DNA of 63,957 nucleotides, the filler included, from Octopus bimaculoides (lineage: Eukaryota): the NCBI RefSeq assembly GCF_001194135.2. It is 3 parts of 3 records of this genome, joined end to end, with 100 filler letters (N's around TTAATTAATTAA, not from the genome) between each part and the next. Parts side by side here need not be neighbours in the genome. Positions count along the whole stretch, not along the records: positions 20,163 to 38,830 come from NC_069007.1; 2 more parts are not named here. One strand, 5' to 3'. The position numbers and the translations under genes were made by a program. A model generated the notes under the pieces. The model saw nothing but the letters and a program-made list of their open reading frames with translations. It searched no databases and was not told where the DNA came from. Every line of letters begins with the position of its first letter. The first letter of the stretch is position 1. Below are positions 20,163-59,189 of this stretch, in pieces.

Positions 20163-20472
20163 CATGTAGGGGCTTTTCTTGCCATCGTTTTATCATGGTC
20201 CGTTGCTGTTCTAGTTTTAGTTTGGATTTCATTTGTTTTATAGCTTTTGTTGTTTCTACTTCTTCTTCGTATTTGTTAGGTAGTATGATTTCTTGTTTGT
20301 ATTTGTCAGCTTCCTTAAATACTGAAAACAGTTTTTTGTTTTGCTTGTGTTTTGTGGCTATTTGTATTAGTTTTCCTTGCTTCTGGAGTAGGTATTTTTG
20401 CAGTCCTATGGTGGTTATTTTATAATGGTTTTCCAGCTGTATAAGACCCCTACCACCTTCTGTACGTTGTAT
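20163..20472 (-). mobile_element. R4/Dong-like LINE fragment immediately upstream of WFS1 coding exon 1
   Basis: RTEGGRGLIQLENHYKITTIGLQKYL...WQEKPLH. Confidence 0.8.
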
Positions 20473-20520
20473 ATTATTATTATCATTATTATTATTATTA
20501 TTATTATTAAAATTCCAGAG

Positions 20521-20737
20521 ATGGAGTCGTCCCTCGATCCAGAGGTTTTGAAGAGAGCAGAAGATGGATCGGAAGAGGACCAACTTATCGTGGGTAAACA
20601 TTTCTTGGTATTGGCTCAGTCTGGGGTCAATGAAGAGAAAAACGGCGTTGAGGCTGTAAAATGGCTCATCATGGCATCGAAACAAGGCAATGAACCTGCA
20701 ACAGAACTTCTCTGTCACTGCAAGGATACACAAATGG
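20521..20737 (+). CDS. WFS1: Wolframin, coding exon 1 (MESSLDPEVLKRAEDG...KDTQM-G, phase 1 end)
   Basis: Translation matches the wolframin N-terminal helical region (VGKHFLVLA..AVKWLIMASKQG vs human VGKHYLQLA..AVDWLVLAAKQG, from memory). Acceptor ttccag at 20513-20518 just before the ATG; donor G|GTAAGA at 20738. The true start or 5' exon may lie upstream. Confidence 0.9.
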
Positions 20738-22850
20738 GTAAGAAACCAGTCACCTTTTTTAAAACCATTTTTGTTGTTGTTGTTGATCCCCAGATGAACC
20801 TTCATTGAGTAGATCCATGATGAAAGTCAATACGGCCATGACCATCTCGTCTTATTGTATAACAAACTATGGTGTTAAGTGCAGCGTTTCTTTATGACTT
20901 CCAGGTTTTCAATATCGTTACCAATAATGTTATGACGACGTTGGGGGTGTGCACAAGGGTGTAGGAATAGTATTACCTTAATAAATATTTGGATATGGTT
21001 ATCTAGAATAACCAAATTAATAAGTTCACGCAGAACGTGCTGCGTAATATGCCAGACGTACGTACGATATTAAAGTAACTCAGTAATCCGATACGAACGA
21101 CTCTTTATTTGATTGAAATGCACGAGTCCACTTTTGGTCACTTGGGGGTGGTCAGGATCCTTCCACAACACTTTGGGGGTGGACAGTCTTGTGGATTTCT
21201 ACCAAGTCAGCTGCTAAACGTTAAAACTTATTTAAATAAAAAGTGGCGATTTCTGTTAGGTTGTATTAAATTTCACTTAAATCCTAGTTTTTATTAATTA
21301 AAAATTTTTTAATTAAAAATTTAAAGAAAATAACAAAGCGTTTTAAAATCTGAATCCGAAATGCAATTATGATTGAAATTAAGAAAAAAATTGTAGCCAC
21401 CCAGAGTTCTTTCCCTTTGACTAAAATTTTTTCTTATTTTCATTTCTATTTCTGTAAGCCCAGAAGTGAGATCTAAGTGAGATGGTCTCGGTTGGAATGC
21501 CTCTTATCAAAGGTCTGCTCCACTAATCTTTGTCCTGGGGTTAAACAATAACAGTAACATCGATACATTATCACGAGCAGTTCAGGGTACTTCTGCGTAG
21601 TAGTCGTTCGTCTTGCTAGAAATAACAGTCAAATCTCTCACAACCACATTCACAAGCGTTTAAAAAGAAAGACTGCGCGCGCTTCCTTACAGTTTTCGGT
21701 TAATGTTGACATTATTACCCGGAAACGAAATCGAAAAAAGAAAATAGTGCAACAGGTGTAAAAAAAAATGTGTAGGAAACGAATCTGAAAACAAAAATGC
21801 CCAGAAGGCAACGAGGAGGGGAGGATTTCGGAAAATTTACAAAATCCGAGTTTTCCCCTCATAACTTTAAGGAAAATATAATCCTTTTGAAATCACAAAT
21901 TAGGTTTTTCNNNNNNNNNNNNNNNNNNNNNNNNNNNNNNNNNNNNNNNNNNNNNNNNNNNNNNNNNNNNNNNNNNNNNNNNNNNNNNNNNNNNNNNNNN
22001 NNNNNNNNNNNNNNNNNNNNNNNNNNNNNNNNNNNNNNNNNNNNNNNNNNNNNNNNNNNNNNNNNNNNNNNNNNNNNNNNNNNNNNNNNNNNNNNNNNNN
22101 NNNNNNNNNNNNNNNNNNNNNNNNNNNNNNNNNNNNNNNNNNNNNNNNNNNNNNNNNNNNNNNNNNNNNNNNNNNNNNNNNNNNNNNNNNNNNNNNNNNN
22201 NNNNNNNNNNNNNNNNNNNNNNNNNNNNNNNNNNNNNNNNNNNNNNNNNNNNNNNNNNNNNNNNNNNNNNNNNNNNNNNNNNNNNNNNNNNNNNNNNNNN
22301 NNNNNNNNNNNNNNNNNNNNNNNNNNNNNNNNNNNNNNNNNNNNNNNNNNNNNNNNNNNNNNNNNNNNNNNNNNNNNNNNNNNNNNNNNNNNNNNNNNNN
22401 NNNNNNNNNNNNNNNNNNNNNNNNNNNNNNNNNNNNNNNNNNNNNNNNNNNNNNNNNNNNNNNNNNNNNNNNNNNNNNNNNNNNNNNNNNNNNNNNNNNN
22501 NNNNNNNNNNNNNNNNNNNNNNNNNNNNNNNNNNNNNNNNNNNNNNNNNNNNNNNNNNNNNNNNNNNNNNNNNNNNNNNNNNNNNNNNNNNNNNNNNNNN
22601 NNNNNNNNNNNNNNNNNNNNNNNNNNNNNNNNNNNNNNNNNNNNNNNNNNNNNNNNNNNNNNNNNNNNNNNNNNNNNNNNNNNNNNNNNNNNNNNNNNNN
22701 NNNNNNNNNNNNNNNNNNNNNNNNNNNNNNNNNNNNNNNNNNNNNNNNNNNNNNNNNNNNNNNNNNNNNNNNNNNNNNNNNNNNNNNNNNNNNTGGGTAT
22801 TTGAGTATATTTAAGAATTTAAGGATTGGAGAAAACGCATGTTATAATTG

Positions 22851-22949
22851 CATACTTTATTCCTACATATGTTTCAAAGGATTACAACCTGTGTGATCCA
22901 TAGGGATCTTTGATATTAAAATTGTAACCTTCTCATCAGGGAAAGCATG
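22851..22949 (-). ncRNA. Type I hammerhead ribozyme, intact core
   Basis: Minus strand: CATGCTTTCC-CTGATGA-GAAGGTTACAAT..GTTGTAATCCTTT-GAAA-CATATGT-A-GGAATAAAGTATG. All core nucleotides present; helices I and II pair; helix III is the palindrome ACATATGT; GUA cleavage triplet. Confidence 0.85.
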
Positions 22950-23515
22950 GGAATCACCTTAAACGTAAGACATTATGACAGATTATGAAAACAATAGATG
23001 GATAAGGTTATGACTTGATTCATTTGAAAAAGACCATTAATAATAATAATAATAATAAAGGAGTTACGATGCAAAAACGTATATATTCAAATGAACATAT
23101 TTATCTTCTTCAATATATATTTCAGTATAAAGAATTCATTGAGACTTAATAAATCAAAATTCCTATACAGGAAAAAATAAATATAACAACAGAAAACCAC
23201 ACTATATATGTGTGTTTGTGTGTCTGCAAATTTTATTGAACTTTTCTTTGTAGTGTTTTTGTCGTCATGAGTGTTGGTGGTTGTCGCAGCAAAATTGGTG
23301 TCACTACTTTTTATTATCACTGTGACACATAGTCCCCAGTTGGTAACATTGATTTCAAGGCTTTCTCAGATGAGAGACTGGCATTCCACTTAATGTCTAT
23401 GTTCCATGCTGGCATGGATTGGAGAGTTATTAATGTAGAAATATGGTATCGTAGCTACTAACAGTTGAGGGTTGCGTAGTCTAGACGGCGTTTTTAGATT
23501 TCATTATTATCTTTA

Positions 23516-23544
23516 ACCCGGGCAAAGCCAGGTATTTCTGCTAG
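23516..23544 (+). mobile_element. Helitron-type 3' terminus (GC hairpin + CTAG|T)
   Basis: acccgggc-aaa-gccaggt hairpin followed 7 nt later by CTAG|tata. Confidence 0.55.
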
Positions 23545-23580
23545 TATATATATATATATACACATACATATATACATATA

Positions 23581-23745
23581 TACGACGGGTTTCTTTCAGT
23601 TTCCGTCTACCAAATCCACTCACAAGGCTTTGGTCGGCCCGAGGCTATAGTAGAAGACACTTGCCCAAGGTGCCACGCAGTGGGACTGAACCCGGAACCA
23701 TGTGGTTCGTAAGCAAGCTACTTACCACACAGCCACTCCTGCGCC
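23581..23745 (-). mobile_element. tRNA-derived SINE family A (resembles octopus OK-type SINE); best-preserved copy
   Basis: Minus strand GGCGCAGGAG-TGGCTGTGTGG (A box)..GGTTCAGTCCC (B box)..GGAAACTGAAAGAA tail. Other copies at about 800-960(-), 26954-27114(-), 39814-39906(+), 50456-50620(-), 61314-61476(-), 63784-63943(+). Confidence 0.85.
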
Positions 23746-24339
23746 TAATAATAATTATTATTTAATTCTATTTTGTTTTTGTATCTGGTATGCAAGATTC
23801 TTCATGTGGATTCATGTGTTGAAACAAATTTCGTCGTGTCTTGGGAGAGTCATTATGCCAATGTAATTAACACACACTCTATAGTGGATTAAGTCAATAG
23901 CCATTGAAAAGGTCACAAGAAGCAACAAAAGAGCTTTGACAAACAAAGATAAAACAATTGGATATTTAATAAGGGAGTGGAATTGAACCAGTGTGTGTGT
24001 GTGTTAATTATATTGGCATGATGACTCTCCCTAGACACAGTTATTTTTCATTGTTTACTTGTTTCAGTCATTGCACTGTGGCCATGCTGGGGCACTACCT
24101 AGAAGGGTTTAGAACACTTATTGATATGCTATCAAAGTGACACTGGGGTAAAATATACGAAGCCCATTATACCCATCATGACTACCCGTCTGATAAAGGA
24201 TACACCAGGCACATGCATCACAACCATATGTGCACGACATGGTGAACTCATATCAAGATAAACAGTGCATGACCTTGCAGGTGGGGCCCAGTTAGAATTT
24301 TTTCAGGCCTTATTATTATTATTAATATTATCATTATTA

Positions 24340-24930
24340 AGGTGGTGAGCTGGCAGATTCATTAGTGCCCTGGACAAAATGCTTTGTGGTATTTCACTCA
24401 TCGCTACATTCTGAGTTCGAATTCCCTCGAGGTCGACAAATTAAATACCAGTTATGCACTGGAATCAATGTAATCGATTATCCCTACCCCCAACTTTCAG
24501 GCCTTGTGCCTATAGTAGAAAGGATTATTATTAAGGCGGTGAGCTGGCAGAATTGTTAGCATGCCGGGTGAAATGGTTAGTGGTATTTCGTCCCACTTTA
24601 TGTTCTGAGTTCAAGTTCCACCAAGGTTGACTTTGCCTTTCATCCTTTCAGGGACAATGAATTAAGTACCAGTTGCATGGGGGGGGGGGTTGATCTAATC
24701 AACTGGCCCCTTCTCCAAAAATTTCAGTCCTTGTGCATAGGATAGAAAAGAATGCTTAGCAGTATTTCACCCATCGCTATGATCTGAGTTCAAATTCCAC
24801 AAATGTTGACTTTGCCTTTAATTCTTTTGGGGTTGATAAATTAAGTACCAGTTGCGTACTGAGGTCAATGTAATCCACTCATCCCCTCCCCCAAAATTGC
24901 TGCCCTTGTGGCAAAATTTGAAACCACTAT
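24340..24930 (+). mobile_element. Three tandem copies of tRNA-derived SINE family B (OR-type-like)
   Basis: ggtggtgagctggcaga..ttagc..ctgagttcaaattcc..gtcgactttgcctttcatcc. Further copies at about 31108-31310, 37500-37930, 46200-47100, 53640-54590, 58850-58970, 62045-62300. Confidence 0.8.
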
Positions 24931-24932
24931 TA

Positions 24933-24963
<31 letters not shown>

Positions 24964-25036
24964 TTACATGTCAGTTTTGGTACATGGGAACTACTTCAGT
25001 GTGGCAGTTTTAATTGGAGTAGTTTTGAGGTATATA

Positions 25037-25086
<50 letters not shown>

Positions 25087-25899
25087 TAGATAGATAGATA
25101 GATAGATAGGCAGATAGATAGATAGATAGATAGATAGGCAGATAGACAGACACAGAGAGATAGATAGATAGACAGATAGATAGATAGATAGGCAGATAGA
25201 TAGACAGACAGATAGATAGATAGATAGGCAGATAGATAGACAGACAGATAGATAGATAAATAGAATGATAATTAGGCTGATATATGGAACAATAATTTTT
25301 TTTGTTTTTTGTATTTTATAATTATTATAATTTATTAATGTATGATGTGTAGGTAGGATAGATGTGCTAATTCTAAACAACTGCATGTGTTATTGGACCA
25401 AATTAATATTTATAACTGGATGGTAGCTGCACCCTAAAATTACTTATTGGGTCAGTCTGGACTTTTATAATCAATAAATTTATATTTAGTAGTTTGTTGT
25501 CTTATATTTCAGCCATGGATAATATTTGACCAATAAATACAATCCAAATATGCCGCAGTGTGGTAGCTGTCGGTTAGTTCTTTGTCCAATCCTGACTGAC
25601 TAGATCTCTGATCAATGCTTTTGCATTCTAGCTATGACCATCATGTCTTTTTTTTTTTAGGAGTGTGTAGGATTACTTTATTTGATTAGATATTAATTAT
25701 CTATGTAGATAATATTCATCATCCTCCACCTCCTCCTCCTCCTCATCATCCTTATCATTTAATGTCTGTTTTCCATGCTGGCATGGGTTGGACGGTTTGA
25801 CCAGAGATGGCCAGCTGGGGAGCTGCCCAGGCTCCATTTTGTCTGTTTTAGTATGGTTTCTATGGCTGGATGCCCTTCCTAATGCCAACCACTTTATAA

Positions 25900-26660
25900 A
25901 ATGTGTTGGGTGCCTCCTGTGCGGCGCTAGCAAAAGTGCTCTTACCTAGCACCAATATGGGTCCTTTCATATGGAATCAGTGGGGTGCTTCTGTATGGCA
26001 CAGACATGGGTGCTTTTATGTGGCACTAACATGAGTATACTCTATCGTGACACCAGAACAGGTGCTTTTGCTTGCTAGCAGCAAGGGTACTTTTAAGTGG
26101 CACCAGCATGGGCACGTTTATGTGACACTGGCGCGGGTGATTCTACAAAGCACCGGCACAGGTGTTTTTATGTGACACCAGCTTTGAAGGGTTTTGAACC
26201 AGTGTGTGTGTGTGTTAATTATATTGGCATGATGACTCTCCCTAGACACAGTTATTTTTTATTCTTTACTTGTTTCACTCATCGCACTGTGGCCATGCTG
26301 GGGCACCACCTAGAAGGGTTTAGTTGAACAGATCAACCCCAGTACTTATTATTGATATGCCATCAAAGTGACACTGGGGTAAAATATATGAAGCTCAGTA
26401 TACCCATCATGACTGCCCGTCTGATACGGTTACACTAGGCATTTTTACGTGGCACCAGCACAGGCACTTTTCCGTGGCACCTGCATCGTTGGCACTGGCG
26501 CAGCTGCTTTTATGTGTCACCGGCAAGGGCACTTTTATGTGGCACTGGAATGGGTTCTTTTACATGACACCAGCACAGGCACTTTTACATGGCACCAGTA
26601 TGGGTGCTTGTATGTGGCACCAGCACAGATGCTTTCACGTGGTACCAGTACCAAGCCTGC
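25900..26660. repeat. Degenerate ~21-26-nt minisatellite (gtgcttttatgtggcaccagcaca), interrupted at ~26196-26440
   Basis: More than 15 recognisable units; the same motif is the variable tail of family C. Confidence 0.75.
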
Positions 26661-27789: not shown

Positions 27790-27969
27790 AAAACAATTGC
27801 AGCGTGGAAGGTGTTTATAAGCCATTTAGAATAACACACAAAATCCGTTAGATTCACTTCAACATTTCAACATTTAAATTTAAATTTAAATTTAAATGTT
27901 GAAGTGAATCTAACGGATTTTGTGTTATTTTAAATGGCTTATAAACACCTTCCACGCTGCAATTGTTTT
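27790..27969. repeat. 180-bp near-perfect palindrome centred on (AAATTT)n
   Basis: aaaacaattgcagcgtggaagg..cttcaacattt / aaatgttgaag..ccttccacgctgcaattgtttt. Confidence 0.95.
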
Positions 27970-28434: not shown

Positions 28435-29344
28435 NNNNNNNNNNNNNNNNNNNNNNNNNNNNNNNNNNNNNNNNNNNNNNNNNNNNNNNNNNNNNNNNNN
28501 NNNNNNNNNNNNNNNNNNNNNNNNNNNNNNNNNNNNNNNNNNNNNNNNNNNNNNNNNNNNNNNNNNNNNNNNNNNNNNNNNNNNNNNNNNNNNNNNNNNN
28601 NNNNNNNNNNNNNNNNNNNNNNNNNNNNNNNNNNNNNNNNNNNNNNNNNNNNNNNNNNNNNNTGAAAAAGAGTTGTTTAAGGTTGTTAAATGAAACACCC
28701 ATGTCTCCAGAGGTGAATTATCCAAACCCCAAAGAATTCCTTTCAACACATGACTATGATGCTCCCCGACTACTTCTGCTCATGATCAGAGATGCACATA
28801 TCGTCAGCCACCAAGGGACATGCTCAACTGGTTAAGGTCAAACAACTGACAAGCAAATCTGTGGTATTAAGCAGAATATTTGCTGTAACCCATCTTTTAT
28901 ACCAAGACAAAACAATGTACATGATAACACTTCCAATCAATTAAGATCAGAAGCCATGAGAGCCACTGCCTGGTACTGCATAATTATTGTTGTTATTATT
29001 ATGAGAGATCTTTTTATGAGTAAGAGAGCATATGGAACAATATTTCCACATAATCCATTTTTCTTTTCCTTTTAAGTGTCCTTTTTGTTGTAGATAGCAC
29101 CATTTCACTCTTCTTTTGGGCTCTTCAGTACAACATAACTTGAGATCATGAAATTAGTTGGTCTATATTCATGTAAAACCTTTAGGAATTATATATGATT
29201 GATTTTCTTTTTTTCTCTGTTTTCTTACTCTCTTAACAGTGGAGAAAAGTTGTGAATAGTCAGAGGCGGGGAAATGAAAGCCCTAGAGTCATTTAAAAGT
29301 AACATTACACTTAGATATGATTGTTCTTTTGTTTATCTTTACAG

Positions 29345-29545
29345 GGATCACAGAACAGAATGAAGAACTCATTAAATGGTGTATAAATACGTCTTCAATG
29401 GAAAAGAAAATCAGACTTGCTGCCAGGCAGATGTTTGGCTCTCTCAACAAGACCCACAAAGAAGTGTTGAGCAAGGATGAGTATATGAAAGCCATAAAGG
29501 AAATCCCAGGGGATGAACAGGCACGGAAATTATTGGCTGCAGCAG
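29345..29545 (+). CDS. WFS1: Wolframin, coding exon 2 (GITEQNEELIKWC...RKLLAAA-G)
   Basis: Acceptor tttacag|, donor G|GTAATG; 201 nt, phase 1-1. GITEQNE..EKKIRLAARQMF matches human GITSENE..ERAVRKAALVMY (recalled). Confidence 0.92.
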
Positions 29546-30369
29546 GTAATGGGGTCTGGGATGTATGTGTATGTGGCGGGGGGGGGGGCTGCTCATAATT
29601 GTTGTTGTTGTTATGGTGGTGGTGTTGCTGTTGTCGTTGTTGTAGTTGCTTTTGTTGTTGTTGTTATTATTATTATGTTTATGTCTTATTCAACAGATAG
29701 AGGGCAGCACCTCTGACTTTTTGTAGGGTCTTTTAAGGTGCAAAGGAAAGGAACAGAATGGAAGACAGCAAGAACCCATAATTCATGGCATTGCTTCTAA
29801 AGAATACCAAAATATTAGAATCTTTTCTGTTTGGCTGCCACTTTCCAATTTCTTAAAATTCTGATCCAATTGATTTAAAATTTGGTGTATTGATGTAGTT
29901 TTGTATGCTAGTTATTGACATGAAATTCATTTTCACCATAGATCAATAAATAAATAGCACCTTATGAACCAGGTTCAAATCCTACAGAGCCCACCTCCAG
30001 TTTTCATCATTCCAGGGTCAATAAATAGAAACCATTCTAGAGCAGTGGAATGGCACAATTCTTATGGTACCTTGTAGTGATTGTTTCAGTTCTTTGTATT
30101 CTGAGTTCAAATCCTACAAGAGCCTGCTTGGCTGTTAGACCTAACCATCACTGTGTCAATTAAATTTTCGCTGGTGATGTCACATGCAAATCATATGCAA
30201 ATCAGGTCTTGTGATATCTCTCTCTATTGGCCAATACAAAAATATAATGTGTGTACATTGTCATTTGAATTGTTGAGAATTCCGTAAAGTACCCCAATAC
30301 CGGAAATGAGTTAAATCAGTTCCTGTACATTAAGGGTTAATCTTAACCCTTCTTTTTCTTCTGTGATAG

Positions 30370-30509
30370 GTAAGAAGATTGGTGATGCCATCTCTGAAGA
30401 TGCTTTCGTAAAGACCATCTCCAAGAAGATCCAAGGAAAGATTAATTTGACTGAGGAAGAAGCAGCTGAACAGTCTGAGGTGTACAAGAGATCAAGCATT
30501 TGGTCAAAG
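30370..30509 (+). CDS. WFS1: Wolframin, coding exon 3 (GKKIGDAISEDAFVKTISKKIQG...SIWSK)
   Basis: Pyrimidine-rich acceptor ...ctgtgatag|, donor AAG|GTAAGA; 140 nt, phase 1-0, restores frame into exon 4. Resembles human IALDDFVEITKKYAKG (recalled). Confidence 0.9.
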
Positions 30510-31062
30510 GTAAGACAAATGTCCATCATCACTGTTATCATCAACATCAACATCATCAACATCATTTAACACGTTTTTCATGCTGGCATGGGTTGGACAG
30601 CTTGACAGGAACTAACAAGGCCAGGGGCTGCTCCAAGTTCCATTGTCTGTTTCGGTTTGGTTTCTATGGTTGGATGCCCTTCCTAATGCCAACCACTCCA
30701 CAGAGTGTACAAAGTGCTTTTTACATGGTACCATCACCAGAGTTTTTTACATGGCACCAGAACCACTGCATGTTTCATGGCATCGGCATCCACACCAATG
30801 CTTTTTATGTGGCACCTTGGTTTTCAGNNNNNNNNNNNNNNNNNNNNNNNNNNNNNNNNNNNNNNNNNNNNNNNNNNNNNNNNNNNNNNNNNNNNNNNNN
30901 NNNNNNNNNNNNNNNNNNNNNNNNNNNNNNNNNNNNNNNNNNNNNNNNNNNNNNNNNNNNNNNNNNNNNNNNNNNNNNNNNNNGCACATGCACACTGACA
31001 TTGTACATTCAGCTGACCATACCTTATTTATTCATACATTTGTTTAGTCAAAGGTAGAAAGG

Positions 31063-31100
<38 letters not shown>

Positions 31101-31310
31101 GATTATTAAGGTGGCAGAATTGTTAGCACACTGGGCGAAATGTTTAGTGGTATTTTATCTGTCACTACTTTCTGAGTTCAAATTCTGCCAAGGTCGACTT
31201 TGCCTTTCATCCTTTCAGGGTCAATAAACCAGTCAAGTACTGGAATCGATGTGATCAACTTAGCCCCCTCCCCACAAATTTCAGGCTTTGTTCTTATTGT
31301 AGAAAGGATT

Positions 31311-32407: not shown

Positions 32408-34171
32408 ATTATGAAACATCCGATGACTACGATCAAAGTTTGTGTCCAGCACGTGTTGGAAGTGGCATCAACTCGAGGAACCAGTTGGCTGCTCTCTCTC
32501 ATCCCAACCCGACAAATCTATTTTATGTTGCTGCTCTTCGTCTACAGTTTCATCACTCCAGACCTTATTTTATTTATTTTCCCCCTCTTCTTCTTCTACC
32601 TTTCTATTGCCGCCATGATAATTTCTACCTTGCAGATGTTCTACAGTCGGCAGAAGCTTTCGGAAACAGCTCGGCTGACGTCTGTGTTGAAGAATTTTGA
32701 GATTGGCGTCGACATTGAAAATGTCGAGTCCCAGTTCTGCTGGAATTCTATGGCGCCGTATATAGTCTTTTTCCTGTCAGTTTTTACTACGGTTTTTAAT
32801 TTTTCTCTGGCCGACAAATTGTACATACCATGTTCGGAGTTTTGTGTTATCTCTCTGCTGTTAGCCATTAGTTGTTTTATTGCATTAAGTGACAGCTATG
32901 ACCACTTGACCTTAGCATGTCTGGCCACCAACTTATTTGCCTCCCTTCCGACACTTATGAAAAATTTCCCAGACATCCCTGTTGTAGTCCAACTCCTCCA
33001 GTTCATCTCGTCTCCGTTGTTTGTGATCCACATTGGACTCGGATTCAACTTCAACTTCAGCCTCCCGTCTGCTGCTTTCATCACCCTCCTCTTCCTCTTC
33101 ATGTTCATGGCCAGGAAGAAATCCTGGCAAGGATTCTACCGAGTCCTCATTCCTCACCTGGTCTGCTATTTTTGGTGGAACTTTGCGATAATACTCTTTA
33201 CTTACACCACCTGGTGGACCTTGGCTCGTGCCACCGTCGGTTACCTCATGCTGCCTCTGTTAGTGCCACTTTCGTTCTTGACTGCTTGCCTGTCGGTTCT
33301 CTACTTCATTTTCAAAATTGTCCAATCAGCGGTGTTCGGTAAAATTCTGACGACTGCTATTCTGCTCGGGATTCCACTTGGTCTCACGCAAAGCCATCTT
33401 TTGCTTGGAGACCAAATTAACTCGAAATACCGAGTCGCAAAACGAATTGCAATTGCCATTTTCTGCGTCGTTGCTATTGTTCCGTTGTTCTTCATTCAGA
33501 TTCCTGCGATGCACGAAGAGACTCAGAGTCAGTTGACATGGCCTGAATACATGCAACGTTGCAGCAGTATTCCTCCAGGTGAGACCAAAGCGACGACTGC
33601 AATACGCTGCTCGCACCTGCAAGGAATAAAAGTCGCATGGAACGGTACAATTGAAGACATAACCATTACAAAAGTGGAGAATTCGGCAGAGAAATTTCTT
33701 GAAAGTATACCACTGTTTATAGCAAACCACTTACGCTGTGCCTACGGAGAAGCTTATGAGTGTAAGGAAGAAAACTTTGAGAATACCGTCGACTACGAAC
33801 ATTGCCAGCAAATGATGTCTCTAGGCCGGACCTGTCACCTCAAAGAATATGATTACTATACGTTTAAGGTATTTGTTACCATGCAAGGATCTTACATTCA
33901 ATGTTCGCTGCTGGCAGATTACCGTTTCCAAGACCAGCTGCTGACTTTACGAGTTGGAGACCGTGTAAGATTCATTGGCCTGATAGCACAAAATTTGGCG
34001 CTGGGTGACCCTATTCTTCATCTCCGCCACATATCTACTGAAGACCGAGATTTGCCTCAGATGATAGAGATTAACGAAATCCAAGATATTTTCCGAATGA
34101 AGTTAGTCGAGATGTTATCAATATTGGTGCGATTCTTCATGTTCCCTTTGTTTGAGTTTGCTTACAATTAG
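32408..34171 (+). CDS. WFS1: Wolframin, large terminal coding exon (multi-pass TM region plus luminal domain), stop TAG
   Basis: Uninterrupted 587-codon frame after acceptor cttttag|. Motifs IPCSEF, LIPHLVCYFWW, ARATVGY, LTWPEY..RC, RCSHLQG, NSAEKFLESIPLFI, RCAYGE, CHLKEYDYY and terminal FFMFPLF are diagnostic of wolframin. Confidence 0.97.
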   Translation: MMKHPMTTIKVCVQHVLEVASTRGTSWLLSLIPTRQIYFMLLLFVYSFITPDLILFIFPLFFFYLSIAAMIISTLQMFYSRQKLSETARLTSVLKNFEIGVDIENVESQFCWNSMAPYIVFFLSVFTTVFNFSLADKLYIPCSEFCVISLLLAISCFIALSDSYDHLTLACLATNLFASLPTLMKNFPDIPVVVQLLQFISSPLFVIHIGLGFNFNFSLPSAAFITLLFLFMFMARKKSWQGFYRVLIPHLVCYFWWNFAIILFTYTTWWTLARATVGYLMLPLLVPLSFLTACLSVLYFIFKIVQSAVFGKILTTAILLGIPLGLTQSHLLLGDQINSKYRVAKRIAIAIFCVVAIVPLFFIQIPAMHEETQSQLTWPEYMQRCSSIPPGETKATTAIRCSHLQGIKVAWNGTIEDITITKVENSAEKFLESIPLFIANHLRCAYGEAYECKEENFENTVDYEHCQQMMSLGRTCHLKEYDYYTFKVFVTMQGSYIQCSLLADYRFQDQLLTLRVGDRVRFIGLIAQNLALGDPILHLRHISTEDRDLPQMIEINEIQDIFRMKLVEMLSILVRFFMFPLFEFAYN

Positions 34172-34785: not shown

Positions 34786-35074
34786 GGTGTATATACATAA
34801 TTATACATCATTTGTTAAAAGCACACTTTCATAATATCATGTCATTAAAACTAGGCTGGACTGAATCAAAGACAAACTTTTACAAGAATTTTCGCAAGGA
34901 AAACAAAAGAACTTTCTCTCTGTCTCACCAAAAGTGCACTATATTCTTTAAACTGGAATCGTTTAAGTGTTTGAGTCTGAAATTTCAATCCTAGAACAGC
35001 ATGACTTTCAATAAAGATCAAATAACTTCGGTTAGAACTGGTGCTTTGATCTGTTTTCTTTGAGTTATATATAT

Positions 35075-35850
35075 GATACATCTGCTAAATGAAATTTATT
35101 TGAACTGTTAAGTCTGCTGATGGAATTCCCATGTCTTGAAGTCTGAAGACAGGGATAACTCTAGTTATAAATGGCATTTTTATTAATTTCATTTGTACCA
35201 TAATAAAGTCTGCTTAAAGAAATGGAAGTTCTGCTTAACAAAATTTATCTGGAATTGTTAAATTTGCTGATGGTAGCTCCTGGTCTTGAAGTTTTGATGA
35301 GAATAACTCGAGTTAGGAATGGTATTTTTACCAATTAAATTCATACCAGTCTGCTTAAAGGAATGTAATTTCTGCTTATTGAAATTTGTCTGGAATTGAT
35401 AAAATTTGCTGATGGAGTCCCGTTGTCTTGAAGTCTGAAATCTCAGATAACTCAAATTAGGAATGGAATTTTTACCAAATAAATCTGTATTGGAATAAAG
35501 TCTGCTCAAAGAAATATCAGATCTGTATAATGAAATTTTAGTAGAACCATTAAATTTACTGATGGAATTCCAAAGTTTCGAATTTTGATATATGAAGAAA
35601 ACAGAAAATTTGAGGTAGAAATGGTTGTTTTATCAATTATGCTTGTCATAATAAAGACTGCTCAAAAAAATGTAAGGTTTGCTTGAAGAAATTTGTCTGA
35701 AGTTGTTTAAATTTGTTGATGGACTCTCCATGCTTTGAAGTCTAAATATGGAGATAGTTCTTGTTAGAAATGGAATTTTTACTGATTTAATTTGTGCCAT
35801 GATAAATAAACTCCACTTAAAGAAATGTATCTGGAACTAACTGGAAACAG
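35075..35850. repeat. Degenerate tandem array, ~150-bp unit, ~5 copies
   Basis: Anchor (g/a)(c/t)tgatgg at 35116, 35266, 35408, 35558, 35715; recurring aataaagtctgctyaaagaaat. Confidence 0.88.
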
Positions 35851-58089: not shown

Positions 58090-59189
58090 TGCATACACAT
58101 GCACACACACACAGAGGCGCACACAAGCAAACACACTTACATACAATTCCCTGCATGTATGCTATTTATTCACACGAGATATTCTTACAACACTGATAGA
58201 AGAAACAACGGCAGTTTCATTGATGAAATTTCACTGAGTTGAATTTTTGGTTGGGTTGTTGTACCCTGTGAGCATATAACACTTCAATCCACACGACACA
58301 CTCATCACTGTTGTAATCCCTTATTAAAGGCAACAGTGTCAATATCAATATGCTCTCTATGATGTAATACTGTTACATTGCACGCACATACGTCATGCCA
58401 TGAAGAAGCAGTAAGCTACAGCTTGACTAAAATGAGAAGCCGTCATCTGAAATACACGTATGTATGTGTGCGTGTGGGTATCTGTGAGTGATGACGATAT
58501 TTCATTGGTGGAAGATAATATAGGAATAAGGCGTGGGGGTGGAGGTATAAGCTCACCAAGGGTCCATGGTGCCGGAACAGCTATGACATTTCCGGTTTCC
58601 CTTCTTGGTATTTCATTTCAATTATGACACAATACTAATACTTTTGGAATGGTATGAACACCTCTGAATCACAAATTGTTTTTGTTTTTCATTCTCTAAA
58701 TATGAAGCTGTGTACAAAACGAAGACATTATTGCTGCAGTAGTCATTAATGGCGGCGGATTAGTTGAATCAATAAAAAGGCGGGAAGAACAGTGTTGGTT
58801 TGACAGAATCAATAGAATCAGAGATTAAATGATGATATATTGATTTTAAATTTTGGCACAAGACCAACAATTCCAGGGGAGGGGTGAGTCGATTACATCG
58901 ATCCCAATGGTACTCATTTAATCAACCCTAGAAGGATAAAAGACACAGTCGACCTCGGCAGAATTTGAACTCTTAGCATTTCTCTTTTAAATGATGATAT
59001 ATTGGAAGAATCTTTAAAGCGTCGGTCAAAATATCTGGCAGTATTTAGCTAAGTCACTATACATTTTGAGTTCAAATCTCGTCCATGCTGGGTTTGTCTT
59101 TCATCCCTCTAGAAACAGTAAAATTTTTATCGGTTAAATAATGGATTTCATTTTTGATGGATTGTCGCCCCTTAACTGCGTGGCTTTGT

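What the first reader, a model, noticed from the sequence alone, without database searches (positions are those of the whole stretch)
22851..22949. Intact type I hammerhead ribozyme antisense in WFS1 intron 1
Seen (minus strand): C3-A9 CTGATGA at 22939-22933. Helix II has 12 bp (GAAGG/CCTTT plus TTACAAT/GTTGTAA around one bulge) with an inner GATCC/GGATC hairpin. GAAA is at 22875-22872 and helix III is the palindrome ACATATGT. Predicted cleavage is after GUA, between 22864 and 22863. Helix I is TCC/GGA plus CATGCTT/AAGTATG around a bulge, and AATAAA follows the cut site. Established: this layout matches dimer-competent hammerheads of Penelope pLTRs and retrozymes, where helix I/II contacts speed cleavage. 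Inference: potentially still active; it would cut any minus-strand transcript here, including a MAN2A pre-mRNA if WFS1 is nested.
Basis: partly seen in the sequence, partly recalled or inferred. Interest (0 to 1): 0.85.

Follow-up and report, generated by a model that had tools for sequence, protein, structure and literature searches.

The report
Hammerhead ribozyme relic in octopus intron
A complete hammerhead self-cleaving RNA motif sits antisense in an intron of the Octopus bimaculoides wolframin gene. It is a stray, partly decayed copy of a mobile repeat family that also carries the motif in Octopus sinensis: a real but fairly ordinary retroelement ribozyme, not a host regulatory device.

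Summary
The motif is present exactly as described, on the minus strand at 22851-22949. It has CUGAUGA, GAAA and a GUA cleavage site, a three-segment helix II, a 2-bp helix III inside the palindrome ACAUAUGU, and a bulged helix I.

It is not a chance match. In 190 Mb of composition-matched random sequence, no hit combined these features.

A second copy with the same unusual architecture lies in O. sinensis, 7 kb downstream of WFS1. Excluding the core boxes, the two copies are homologous (0 of 5000 shuffles reach the observed score). They differ by three compensatory pair changes, plus a UA/CG swap that keeps the helix III palindrome.

The O. sinensis copy is a 540-bp insertion into a (TA)n microsatellite. 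It is absent from the empty site in O. vulgaris, so the family moved recently. Its inverted, 5'-truncated duplicate structure and microsatellite target resemble Penelope-like element (PLE) insertions.

Three caveats:
- Rfam recognises neither copy, even at E<=10.
- The window copy has G10.1·U11.1 instead of G-C, looks CpG-decayed, is solitary and abuts an assembly gap.
- It is absent from the orthologous intron of the sister species, and the intron is number 2, not 1.

Catalytic activity is untested. Verdict: a new member of a known kind, of moderate to low interest.

The parts
22943..22949 (-). Helix I, distal 5' strand (CAUGCUU)
   Evidence: Pairs with AAGUAUG 22857-22851, 7 bp including one G·U. 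The MFE fold reproduces it. This register is not shared with the O. sinensis copy.
22940..22942 (-). Helix I, proximal 5' strand (UCC; positions 2.3-2.1)
   Evidence: Pairs with GGA 22863-22861. Pair 2.2-1.2 is C-G here and U-A in the O. sinensis copy, a compensatory change.
22933..22939 (-). Catalytic core box C3-A9 (CUGAUGA)
   Evidence: Read directly. It is the only CTGANGA site in the piece that satisfies the hammerhead descriptor.
22876..22932 (-). Helix II, an extended three-segment rod of 57 nt: GAAGG/CCUUU; UUACAAU/GUUGUAA with bulged U 22881; inner hairpin GAUCC-CUAU-GGAUC (22908-22895)
   Evidence: The O. sinensis copy has the same three segments over a 55-nt span, with compensatory changes at 10.4-11.4 and at the second pair of the extension. 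The closing pair 10.1-11.1 is G·U here and G-C in the O. sinensis copy.
22872..22875 (-). Core box G12-A15.1 (GAAA)
22865..22872 (-). Helix III region, the palindrome ACAUAUGU: A15.1-U16.1 and C15.2-G16.2 closing an AUAU loop. It could form an 8-bp intermolecular helix III in a dimer.
   Evidence: The O. sinensis copy has ACACGUGU, so the palindrome is kept through a UA-to-CG double change. None of 147 random descriptor hits was palindromic.
22863..22864 (-). Predicted self-cleavage site: after A17 (22864) of GUA, before G1.1 (22863)
   Evidence: Follows from hammerhead numbering applied. No cleavage data exist.
22851..22863 (-). Helix I 3' strand (GGA, bulge AUA, AAGUAUG). It contains AAUAAA at 22861-22856.
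   Evidence: An AAUAAA also follows the cut site in the O. sinensis copy.
22794..22961 (-). Extent of the repeat-family fragment that carries the ribozyme. It is cut on its 3' side by the assembly gap 21911-22793. Non-repeated sequence continues upstream to the (ATT)n tract at 23037-23058.
   Evidence: The two-copy profile aligns to window 22961-22800 (L003 31072-30911). The flanks are homologous to the O. sinensis copy with cores excluded: p=0.021 (5' flank), 0.021 (helix II region), 0.0018 (3' flank), and 0 of 5000 combined. There is no match in the orthologous interval of O. sinensis or O. vulgaris.

Best explanation
The site is a solitary fragment of a hammerhead-bearing mobile repeat family of Octopus. 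[quoted passage not shown] The fragment lies antisense in intron 2 of O. bimaculoides WFS1.

In the parent element, the type I hammerhead would cut the element's own transcripts after GUA. Helix III is only 2 bp as a monomer but sits in an 8-nt palindrome. Efficient cleavage is therefore expected only when two copies pair through that palindrome, either as tandem or multimeric transcripts or in trans.

The window copy is a passenger. It is not conserved at the orthologous position in sister species. It has lost the canonical G10.1-C11.1 pair to G·U, probably by CpG decay. It probably has little or no activity on its own.

Shown here: the motif, its non-random nature, its homology to a second copy with compensatory changes, and recent mobility of the family. 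Inferred: the PLE or retrozyme affiliation, dimeric cleavage, and loss of activity in this copy.
For: - Motif: complete core and all three helices at the stated coordinates.
- Chance excluded: no hit in 190 Mb of random sequence combines helix II >=5 bp plus extension, helix I >=3 bp and a palindromic helix III. Two such hits occur in about 0.37 Mb of octopus strands scanned.
- Second copy: L001 55012-55105 (+) has the same architecture, with helix II spans of 55 vs 57 nt, the same three helix II segments, a GUA site and a downstream AAUAAA.
- Homology outside the core boxes: 0 of 5000 shuffles reach the observed combined score. The two copies are reciprocal best non-self nhmmer hits.
- Structure conservation: 20 of 22 pairs are kept in both copies. 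There are 3 compensatory doubles, 3 compatible single changes, and a UA-to-CG swap that keeps the palindrome.
- Mobility: the O. sinensis copy is a 540-bp insertion in a (TA)n tract. O. vulgaris has the empty site.
- PLE-like insertion anatomy: two head-to-head inverted 5'-truncated arms that are 100% identical over 123 nt, a one-sided tail, and a microsatellite target. This compares with the published PLE descriptions (PMC8557442) and with 'dual HHRs 100-700 bp apart on opposite strands' (PMC4209133).
- Helix III type: a short palindromic helix III and dimeric action are the published signature of metazoan type I and PLE hammerheads.
- PLEs in the host: they are annotated in Octopus genomes (PMC13282606).
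- Assembly gap: the gap abutting the window copy fits the known assembly problems at tandem or inverted PLE insertions.
- Decay: the O. sinensis copy has 6 CpGs and the window copy keeps 1. TG, CA or TA sits at three of them, including C11.1.
Against: - No Rfam hammerhead family matches either copy, even at E<=10.
- Only two independent copies, plus one inverted duplicate with a 1-nt core deletion, were available. The second copy was found with a core-requiring descriptor, so core conservation is partly ascertainment. My structural alignment was made by hand with the structure in mind.
- No PLE reverse transcriptase or GIY-YIG ORF, and no full-length element, was seen near either copy.
- Predicted folds are not more stable than shuffles: z = -1.35 and -0.07.
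- Helix II is far longer than in described PLE hammerheads (7-8 bp), and no loop-loop tertiary contact is evident.
- No further copies appear in 219 kb of octopod loci.
- There is no transcription or cleavage evidence.
Confidence: 0.72

Rival explanations
1. The carrier is a foldback or MITE-like DNA transposon, or another non-PLE repeat. The hammerhead motif is real, but the family is not a Penelope-like or retrozyme retroelement. Alternatively, the motif is an incidental feature of a hairpin-forming repeat that yields small RNAs.
For: The O. sinensis copy is a ~386-bp near-perfect palindrome in a TA-rich target, next to Tc1/mariner transposase remnants. Rfam scores it only as generic long miRNA-like hairpins, below threshold. 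No retroelement ORF or poly(A) tail was seen.
Against: The window copy is not palindromic over the 243 nt visible. The insertion has a 150-nt one-sided tail and no clear terminal inverted repeat plus target-site duplication. Compensatory changes specifically preserve the three hammerhead helices and the helix III palindrome. Inverted 5'-truncated pairs at microsatellites are a described PLE hallmark.
Confidence: 0.17
2. Chance hammerhead-like motif in AT-rich intronic DNA, with no biological meaning.
For: There is no Rfam hit. The fold stability is unremarkable. A relaxed descriptor hits random sequence about 0.8 times per Mb, which means thousands of hits per 2.7-Gb genome. PMC4209133 itself discards unclustered hits.
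Against: No random hit in 190 Mb carries the full set of features. A homologous copy with the same unusual architecture and compensatory changes exists in another species.
Confidence: 0.03
3. Host-exapted intronic ribozyme that regulates WFS1 or an antisense or nested transcript by cleaving minus-strand RNA.
For: The core is complete, the location is intronic, and an AAUAAA lies just 3' of the cut. Conserved intronic hammerheads exist in amniotes; this comes from my own knowledge and from reference 66 in the reference list of PMC6155905.
Against: The motif is absent from the orthologous interval in O. sinensis and O. vulgaris, and the compact Argonauta gene has nothing comparable. It lies antisense to WFS1. 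It has a G·U at 10.1-11.1 and CpG decay. No minus-strand gene is called in the locus.
Confidence: 0.03

Closest known systems
Minimal and atypical type I hammerheads of Penelope-like elements (Cervera & de la Pena 2014, PMC4209133)
   Same: - Type I topology and a complete CUGANGA / GAAA / UH core.
- Helix III of 1-2 bp inside a palindrome, implying action as a dimer.
- Helix II longer than the canonical 4 bp.
- Dispersed, mostly solitary copies.
- Paired copies on opposite strands about 100 bp apart (the O. sinensis copy).
- Microsatellite insertion sites.
   Different: - Helix II here spans 55-57 nt in three segments, against 6-8 bp in the described elements.
- There is no unpaired nucleotide between A9 and 10.1.
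- The window copy has G·U, not the 'highly conserved G10.1-C11.1'.
- No PLE ORF or pseudo-LTR was seen nearby.
- No cephalopod example turned up in my searches of the held library.
Metazoan non-LTR retrozymes with type I hammerheads (Cervera & de la Pena 2020, PMC7229834; Li et al. 2026 preprint 10.64898/2026.07.22.740005)
   Same: AT-rich short non-coding repeats that carry a type I hammerhead. Helix III is 2 bp plus a tetraloop, as in invertebrate and axolotl Amex2 motifs. They are proposed to be non-autonomous derivatives of PLE terminal repeats.
   Different: Retrozymes are defined by head-to-tail tandem arrays of 170-400 bp and by circular RNAs. No tandem array is visible here, although the 883-nt gap could hide one. 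The O. sinensis copy is an inverted pair, not a tandem pair. The preprint reports vertebrate retrozymes as excluded from introns.
Rfam Hammerhead_1 (RF00163), Hammerhead_HH9 (RF02275) and related hammerhead models
   Same: The same catalytic core and three-helix junction.
   Different: Neither copy scores within E<=10 against any Rfam family of that clan. I infer, but did not test, that the ~45-nt expansion of helix II and the weak AU-rich stems are the reason.

Membership tests
Hammerhead ribozyme (type I) | Conserved core: C3 U4 G5 A6 N7 G8 A9, G12 A13 A14, A15.1-U16.1, H17 | tested here: met
   CUGAUGA 22939-22933, GAA 22875-22873, A15.1 22872 paired with U16.1 22865, A17 22864. The same holds in the O. 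sinensis copy.
Hammerhead ribozyme (type I) | Three helices around the core, with helix I open and helices II and III closed by loops | tested here: met
   Descriptor hit with helix II 5 bp (+7), helix III 2 bp, helix I 3-4 bp (+7). The MFE fold reproduces helices I and II.
Hammerhead ribozyme (type I) | G10.1-C11.1 closing pair of helix II | tested here: not met
   The window copy has G·U (G 22932, U 22876). The O. sinensis copy has G-C, and the difference sits at a CpG.
Hammerhead ribozyme (type I) | Match to a curated covariance model (Rfam hammerhead clan) | tested here: not met
   No hit at gathering score or at E<=10, on the window copy or the O. sinensis copy.
Hammerhead ribozyme (type I) | Helices supported by covariation among homologues | tested here: inconclusive
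   With two copies only: 20 of 22 pairs kept, 3 compensatory doubles, and the palindrome kept. The alignment was hand-made and the sample is too small for a formal test.
Hammerhead ribozyme (type I) | Site-specific Mg2+-dependent self-cleavage | not testable with these tools
   This needs in vitro transcription and cleavage assays.
Hammerhead ribozyme (type I) | Loop or bulge tertiary contacts between helices I and II | tested here: inconclusive
   Helix I carries a bulge in both copies, but in different registers. The helix II loop is far from the core. No recognisable canonical contact could be assigned.
Penelope-like element hammerhead (pseudo-LTR / 3'-end HHR) | Short helix III with palindromic 15.2-16.2 and loop 3 (dimer-competent) | tested here: met
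   ACAUAUGU (window) and ACACGUGU (O. sinensis). The cofold of the O. sinensis copy forms the intermolecular palindrome helix.
Penelope-like element hammerhead (pseudo-LTR / 3'-end HHR) | Location in the terminal repeats of an element encoding a reverse transcriptase and GIY-YIG endonuclease | tested here: not met
   No such ORF lies within the piece or within 10 kb of the O. sinensis copy. Only LINE-type RT and Tc1/mariner remnants are present. Most published copies are also solitary, so this does not exclude a PLE origin.
Penelope-like element hammerhead (pseudo-LTR / 3'-end HHR) | Insertion anatomy: microsatellite target, inverted 5'-truncated partner, one-sided tail | tested here: met
   O. 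sinensis copy: inserted in (TA)n, with inverted arms and a 150-nt tail. Window copy: begins next to (ATT)n and ends in an assembly gap.
Penelope-like element hammerhead (pseudo-LTR / 3'-end HHR) | Membership of a multi-copy consensus family within the genome | tested here: inconclusive
   Two diverged members (63% identity) in two species. Genome-wide copy number could not be measured, because no octopus genome is searchable by DNA here.
Metazoan non-LTR retrozyme | Head-to-tail tandem repeats of 170-400 bp, each with a type I hammerhead | tested here: not met
   No tandem or second direct copy lies in the piece. The adjacent 883-nt gap is unresolved in the current assembly as well.
Metazoan non-LTR retrozyme | Expression as small linear and circular RNAs | not testable with these tools
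   No transcriptome data were accessible.

The most novel reading that the evidence does not exclude
Octopus genomes carry a currently or very recently active non-autonomous retroelement family. Its hammerhead has an unusually long, conserved three-segment helix II domain that existing covariance models do not detect. The extension could serve as a recognition module for the mobilising reverse transcriptase or for another protein. Copies such as the one in WFS1 intron 2 could still cleave antisense transcripts in trans-dimers with family RNAs.
Probability: 0.25. Interest if true: 0.5.

Novelty: new member of a known kind. Interest (0 to 1): 0.33.

Why it matters
Hammerheads in Penelope-like elements and retrozymes are already known to be abundant in invertebrates. 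One more copy in an intron does not change the picture.

Three things are modestly useful:
- My searches of the held literature found no description of a cephalopod hammerhead family.
- Its expanded helix II makes it undetectable by the Rfam hammerhead models, so such variants are probably under-counted in genome annotation.
- One copy is an insertion difference between O. sinensis and O. vulgaris. That points to recent mobility and offers a tractable system for testing what the ribozyme does in the life cycle of these elements.

For WFS1 itself there is no sign of a host function.

Tried and rejected
- Rfam at gathering score on the piece and on the O. sinensis and Argonauta loci, and at E<=10 on both copies. 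No hammerhead hit. The only hits were chance sRNA/snoRNA matches on the window copy and generic long-hairpin miRNA models, below threshold, on the palindromic O. sinensis insertion.
- Second copy inside the piece (repeat finder, blastn). None. The only neighbouring repeat is 23049-23201 ~ 38619-38780, which ends in (ATT)n and does not include the motif.
- Orthologous intron in O. sinensis, O. vulgaris and Argonauta. No counterpart; the whole interval window 21911-25062 is non-orthologous TE turnover.
- Filling the gap with the newer O. bimaculoides assembly. It is identical to the window and has the same N runs.
- Recovering more family copies through spurious ORFs of the O. sinensis insertion in the protein database. 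No hit.
- Sampling more octopus DNA through a LINE reverse transcriptase query and cluster look-ups. Only one extra 21-kb O. vulgaris locus was reachable, and it has no copy.
- Two pattern scans of metagenome contigs. The first gave 0 hits. The second gave 3 hits that lack helix II pairing, about the number expected by chance.
- RNAalifold on the MAFFT alignment of the two copies. Uninformative, because MAFFT misaligns the helix II 3' strand by one column. I replaced it with a hand alignment.
- A semi-global segment comparison that let the segments slide. Redone with anchored ends.
- No supplementary sequence files of the PLE hammerhead papers were held.

Full report
**1. What is in the sequence**

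- Helix I 5' strand: CAUGCUU (22949-22943) and UCC (22942-22940).
- Core box: CUGAUGA (22939-22933).
- Helix II, in three segments: GAAGG/CCUUU (22932-22928 / 22880-22876); UUACAAU/GUUGUAA (22927-22921 / 22888-22882, with bulged U 22881); and an inner hairpin GAUCC-CUAU-GGAUC (22908-22895).
- Core box: GAAA (22875-22872).
- Helix III: A15.1-U16.1 and C15.2-G16.2 closing an AUAU loop. Together they read as the palindrome ACAUAUGU (22872-22865).
- Cleavage triplet: GUA, with A17 at 22864.
- Helix I 3' strand: GGA, bulge AUA, AAGUAUG (22863-22851). It contains AAUAAA at 22861-22856.

The 10.1-11.1 pair is G·U rather than the nearly invariant G-C. As a monomer, helix III has only two base pairs.

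**2. Is it more than chance?**

My descriptor requires CUGANGA, GAAA, UH, helix II >=4 bp, helix III >=2 bp and helix I >=3 bp. It finds only this site in the piece.

| Feature set | Hits per Mb of random sequence |
|---|---|
| Relaxed descriptor | about 0.8-1 |
| Helix II >=5 bp and helix I >=3 bp | 0.32 |
| Plus a second helix II segment of >=5 bp | 0.005 |

None of 147 random hits had a palindromic helix III.

The bare core plus minimal stems would therefore occur thousands of times by chance in a 2.7-Gb genome. The full anatomy seen here would not.

Thermodynamic stability is unremarkable (z = -1.35). Rfam finds no hammerhead family at gathering score, nor at E<=10 in a 307-nt search.

**3. 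Where it is**

The large ORF at 32408-34168 is the last exon of wolframin, 97% identical to the O. sinensis protein.

The piece is identical, N runs included, to Octopus bimaculoides chromosome CM046627.1 (L003, offset 8111).

Mapping the annotated 786-aa protein gives these coding exons:
- Exon 1: about 18 kb upstream of the piece.
- Exon 2: window 20509-20739.
- Exon 3: 29344-29562.
- Exon 4: 30369-30512.
- Exon 5: 32408-34168.

The motif therefore lies in intron 2, antisense to WFS1, not in intron 1.

On the minus strand, 97 nt of unique sequence and an (ATT)n tract (23037-23058) precede it. That tract is the tail of an unrelated repeat, 23049-23201 ~ 38619-38780. On the other side, 70 nt after the cut site, the sequence runs into the 883-nt assembly gap.

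**4. Comparison with sister species**

I fetched the WFS1 loci of O. sinensis (L001), O. vulgaris (L004) and Argonauta hians (L002).

Intronic sequence on both sides is colinear at about 85%: window 20472-21910 with L001 34831-37471, and window 25062-26114 with L001 39731-40752. The interval between them holds different repeats in each lineage, and nothing there matches the motif.

The copy is therefore not a conserved host element.

**5. A second family member**

Scanning the other loci with the descriptor gave one good hit, at L001 55012-55105 (+), 7 kb downstream of O. sinensis WFS1:

...UUC|CUGAAGA|GAAAG-A-CACAA...UUGUG-C-CUUUC|GAAA|C-ACGU-G-U-A^GAA-U-GAAA...

It shares the unusual architecture. 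The helix II span is 55 vs 57 nt, with the same three helix II segments including the inner G(A/G)UCC...GGAU(C/U) hairpin. It also has an 8-nt palindromic helix III, a GUA site and an AAUAAA just downstream.

Because this copy was found with a core-requiring descriptor, I tested homology with the core boxes excluded and the segments anchored. The 5' flank gives p=0.021, the helix II region p=0.021 and the 3' flank p=0.0018. Combined, 0 of 5000 shuffles reach the observed score. The two copies are also each other's best non-self nhmmer hits, at E = 0.05-0.18.

In a hand-made structural alignment (63% identity over 153 columns), 20 of 22 base pairs are kept in both copies.
- Three compensatory double changes: 2.2-1.2 C-G/U-A; 10.4-11.4 G-C/A-U; and second extension pair U-A/C-G.
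- Three compatible single changes.
- The loop of helix III changes UA to CG, which keeps the palindrome.

With two sequences and a structure-aware alignment this is supportive, not a formal covariation test. MAFFT plus RNAalifold was uninformative because of a one-column slip.

Cofolding two O. sinensis copies forms the intermolecular palindrome helix expected of a dimeric hammerhead.

Rfam does not recognise this copy either. The negative Rfam result therefore reflects the variant architecture rather than damage specific to the window copy.

**6. The family is mobile**

The O. sinensis copy lies in a 540-bp segment (L001 54771-55311) that interrupts a (TA)n microsatellite. O. vulgaris has the uninterrupted microsatellite with 96% identical flanks. 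O. bimaculoides has no related sequence in the corresponding region.

The insertion consists of three parts:
- Two head-to-head inverted arms, 100% identical over 123 nt.
- A left arm that carries a one-base deletion inside its core box.
- A 150-nt tail on one side only.

Several features are described for PLEs and their hammerheads (PMC8557442; PMC4209133):
- Inverted 5'-truncated partners.
- One-sided tails.
- Microsatellite targets.
- Hammerheads near the 3' end or in the pseudo-LTR.
- 'Dual HHRs 100-700 bp apart on opposite strands'.
- Assembly problems at such insertions.

PLEs are annotated in Octopus genomes (PMC13282606). Animal retrozymes are argued to derive from PLE terminal repeats (preprint 10.64898/2026.07.22.740005).

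No reverse transcriptase / GIY-YIG ORF was found near either copy. The PLE or retrozyme affiliation is therefore an inference from anatomy. A foldback or MITE-like carrier remains a rival.

**7. State of the window copy**

The O. sinensis copy has six CpGs. The window copy retains one and has TG, CA or TA at three others. One of these is the C11.1-G12 step, whose C-to-U change produces the G·U wobble.

Together with its solitary state and its absence from sister species, this suggests a passenger copy drifting neutrally in a gene body. Published PLE-type hammerheads show little or no activity as single motifs and low activity as dimers in vitro. Axolotl and other short-helix-III motifs need dimers.

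I therefore consider autonomous cleavage by this copy unlikely. Cleavage in a dimer, with a hidden neighbour in the gap or with family transcripts in trans, is possible but unproven.

**8. Mechanism proposed**

- Shown: a complete type I hammerhead motif that belongs to a recently mobile repeat family.
- Inferred: in the parent element the ribozyme processes element transcripts after GUA. It acts through a dimer, in which two palindromic helix III strands pair.
- Inferred: the long helix II rod is a family-specific peripheral domain of unknown role.
- Inferred: the AAUAAA next to the cut site, present in both copies, may be a polyadenylation signal of the element, or may simply be part of helix I.

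**9. Novelty and score**

Hammerheads in PLEs and retrozymes are well established across metazoans. My literature searches found no description of a cephalopod family.

The expanded helix II, and the fact that Rfam does not detect it, are a minor variant feature. I classify the finding as a new member of a known kind, with interest about 0.33.

The claims of intactness and activity, the intron number and the high interest score were not borne out.

**10. Limits**

No octopus genome could be searched by DNA, so family size, consensus sequence and full-length structure are unknown. Attempts to reach more copies through the protein tools and metagenome scans failed.

Noticed in passing
L001 54771-55311 (O. 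sinensis, 7 kb downstream of WFS1): A 540-bp insertion in a (TA)n microsatellite, absent from the O. vulgaris empty site (L004 ~58197-58232). It is a ~386-bp near-perfect palindrome carrying two opposed hammerhead motifs, one with a 1-nt core deletion, plus a 150-nt one-sided tail.
   Followed up: yes
window 21911-22793: An 883-nt assembly gap begins 70 nt after the predicted cleavage site. It persists in the chromosome-level O. bimaculoides assembly (L003 30022-30904). It could hide tandem or inverted partners of the element.
   Followed up: partly
window 23049-23201 and 38619-38780: Two direct copies (88% identical) of an unclassified repeat. On the minus strand the first ends in an (ATT)n tail at 23037-23058, immediately upstream of the hammerhead-bearing fragment.
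   Followed up: partly
window 20164-20470 (-): Open frame resembling the C-terminal part of a LINE-type reverse transcriptase (…GGRGLIQLENHYKITTIGLQKYL…). It is cut by the piece edge and lies just upstream of WFS1 coding exon 2.
   Followed up: no
window 24310-24394, 24504-24588, 31109-31228, 37707-37791 and inverted copies 37519-37696: Multiple copies, 70-85% identical, of a SINE-like repeat that begins after (ATT)n with AAGGTGG(C/T)(G/A)AGCTGGCAGAATTGTTAGCA. ARAGORN calls no tRNA in them.
   Followed up: partly
window 25940-26650: A 25-nt-period minisatellite (consensus ~TGGCACCAGCACAGGTGCTTTTACG) in two blocks. It is colinear with the O. sinensis intron.
   Followed up: no
window 27790-27841 / 27918-27969: A 52-nt inverted repeat, 96% complementary, with a 76-nt spacer. 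It is MITE-like or hairpin-forming.
   Followed up: no
window 35022-35791: About six tandem units of ~133-158 nt (ATAACTC.AGTTAGGAATGG.ATTTTTAC…) downstream of WFS1.
   Followed up: no
L001 38290-39270 (-) and L001 53170-54121 (-): O. sinensis-specific TE remnants. The first is a LINE reverse transcriptase C-terminal region with a PHD-type zinc finger, inside the interval orthologous to the hammerhead site. The second is a Tc1/mariner-like transposase next to the palindromic insertion.
   Followed up: partly
window 20509-20739, 29344-29562, 30369-30512, 32408-34168 (+): Coding exons 2-5 of O. bimaculoides wolframin (XP_014767880.1). Exon 1 (MTAVDKVPPPTK…) lies about 18 kb upstream of the piece, at L003 10001.
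   Followed up: yes
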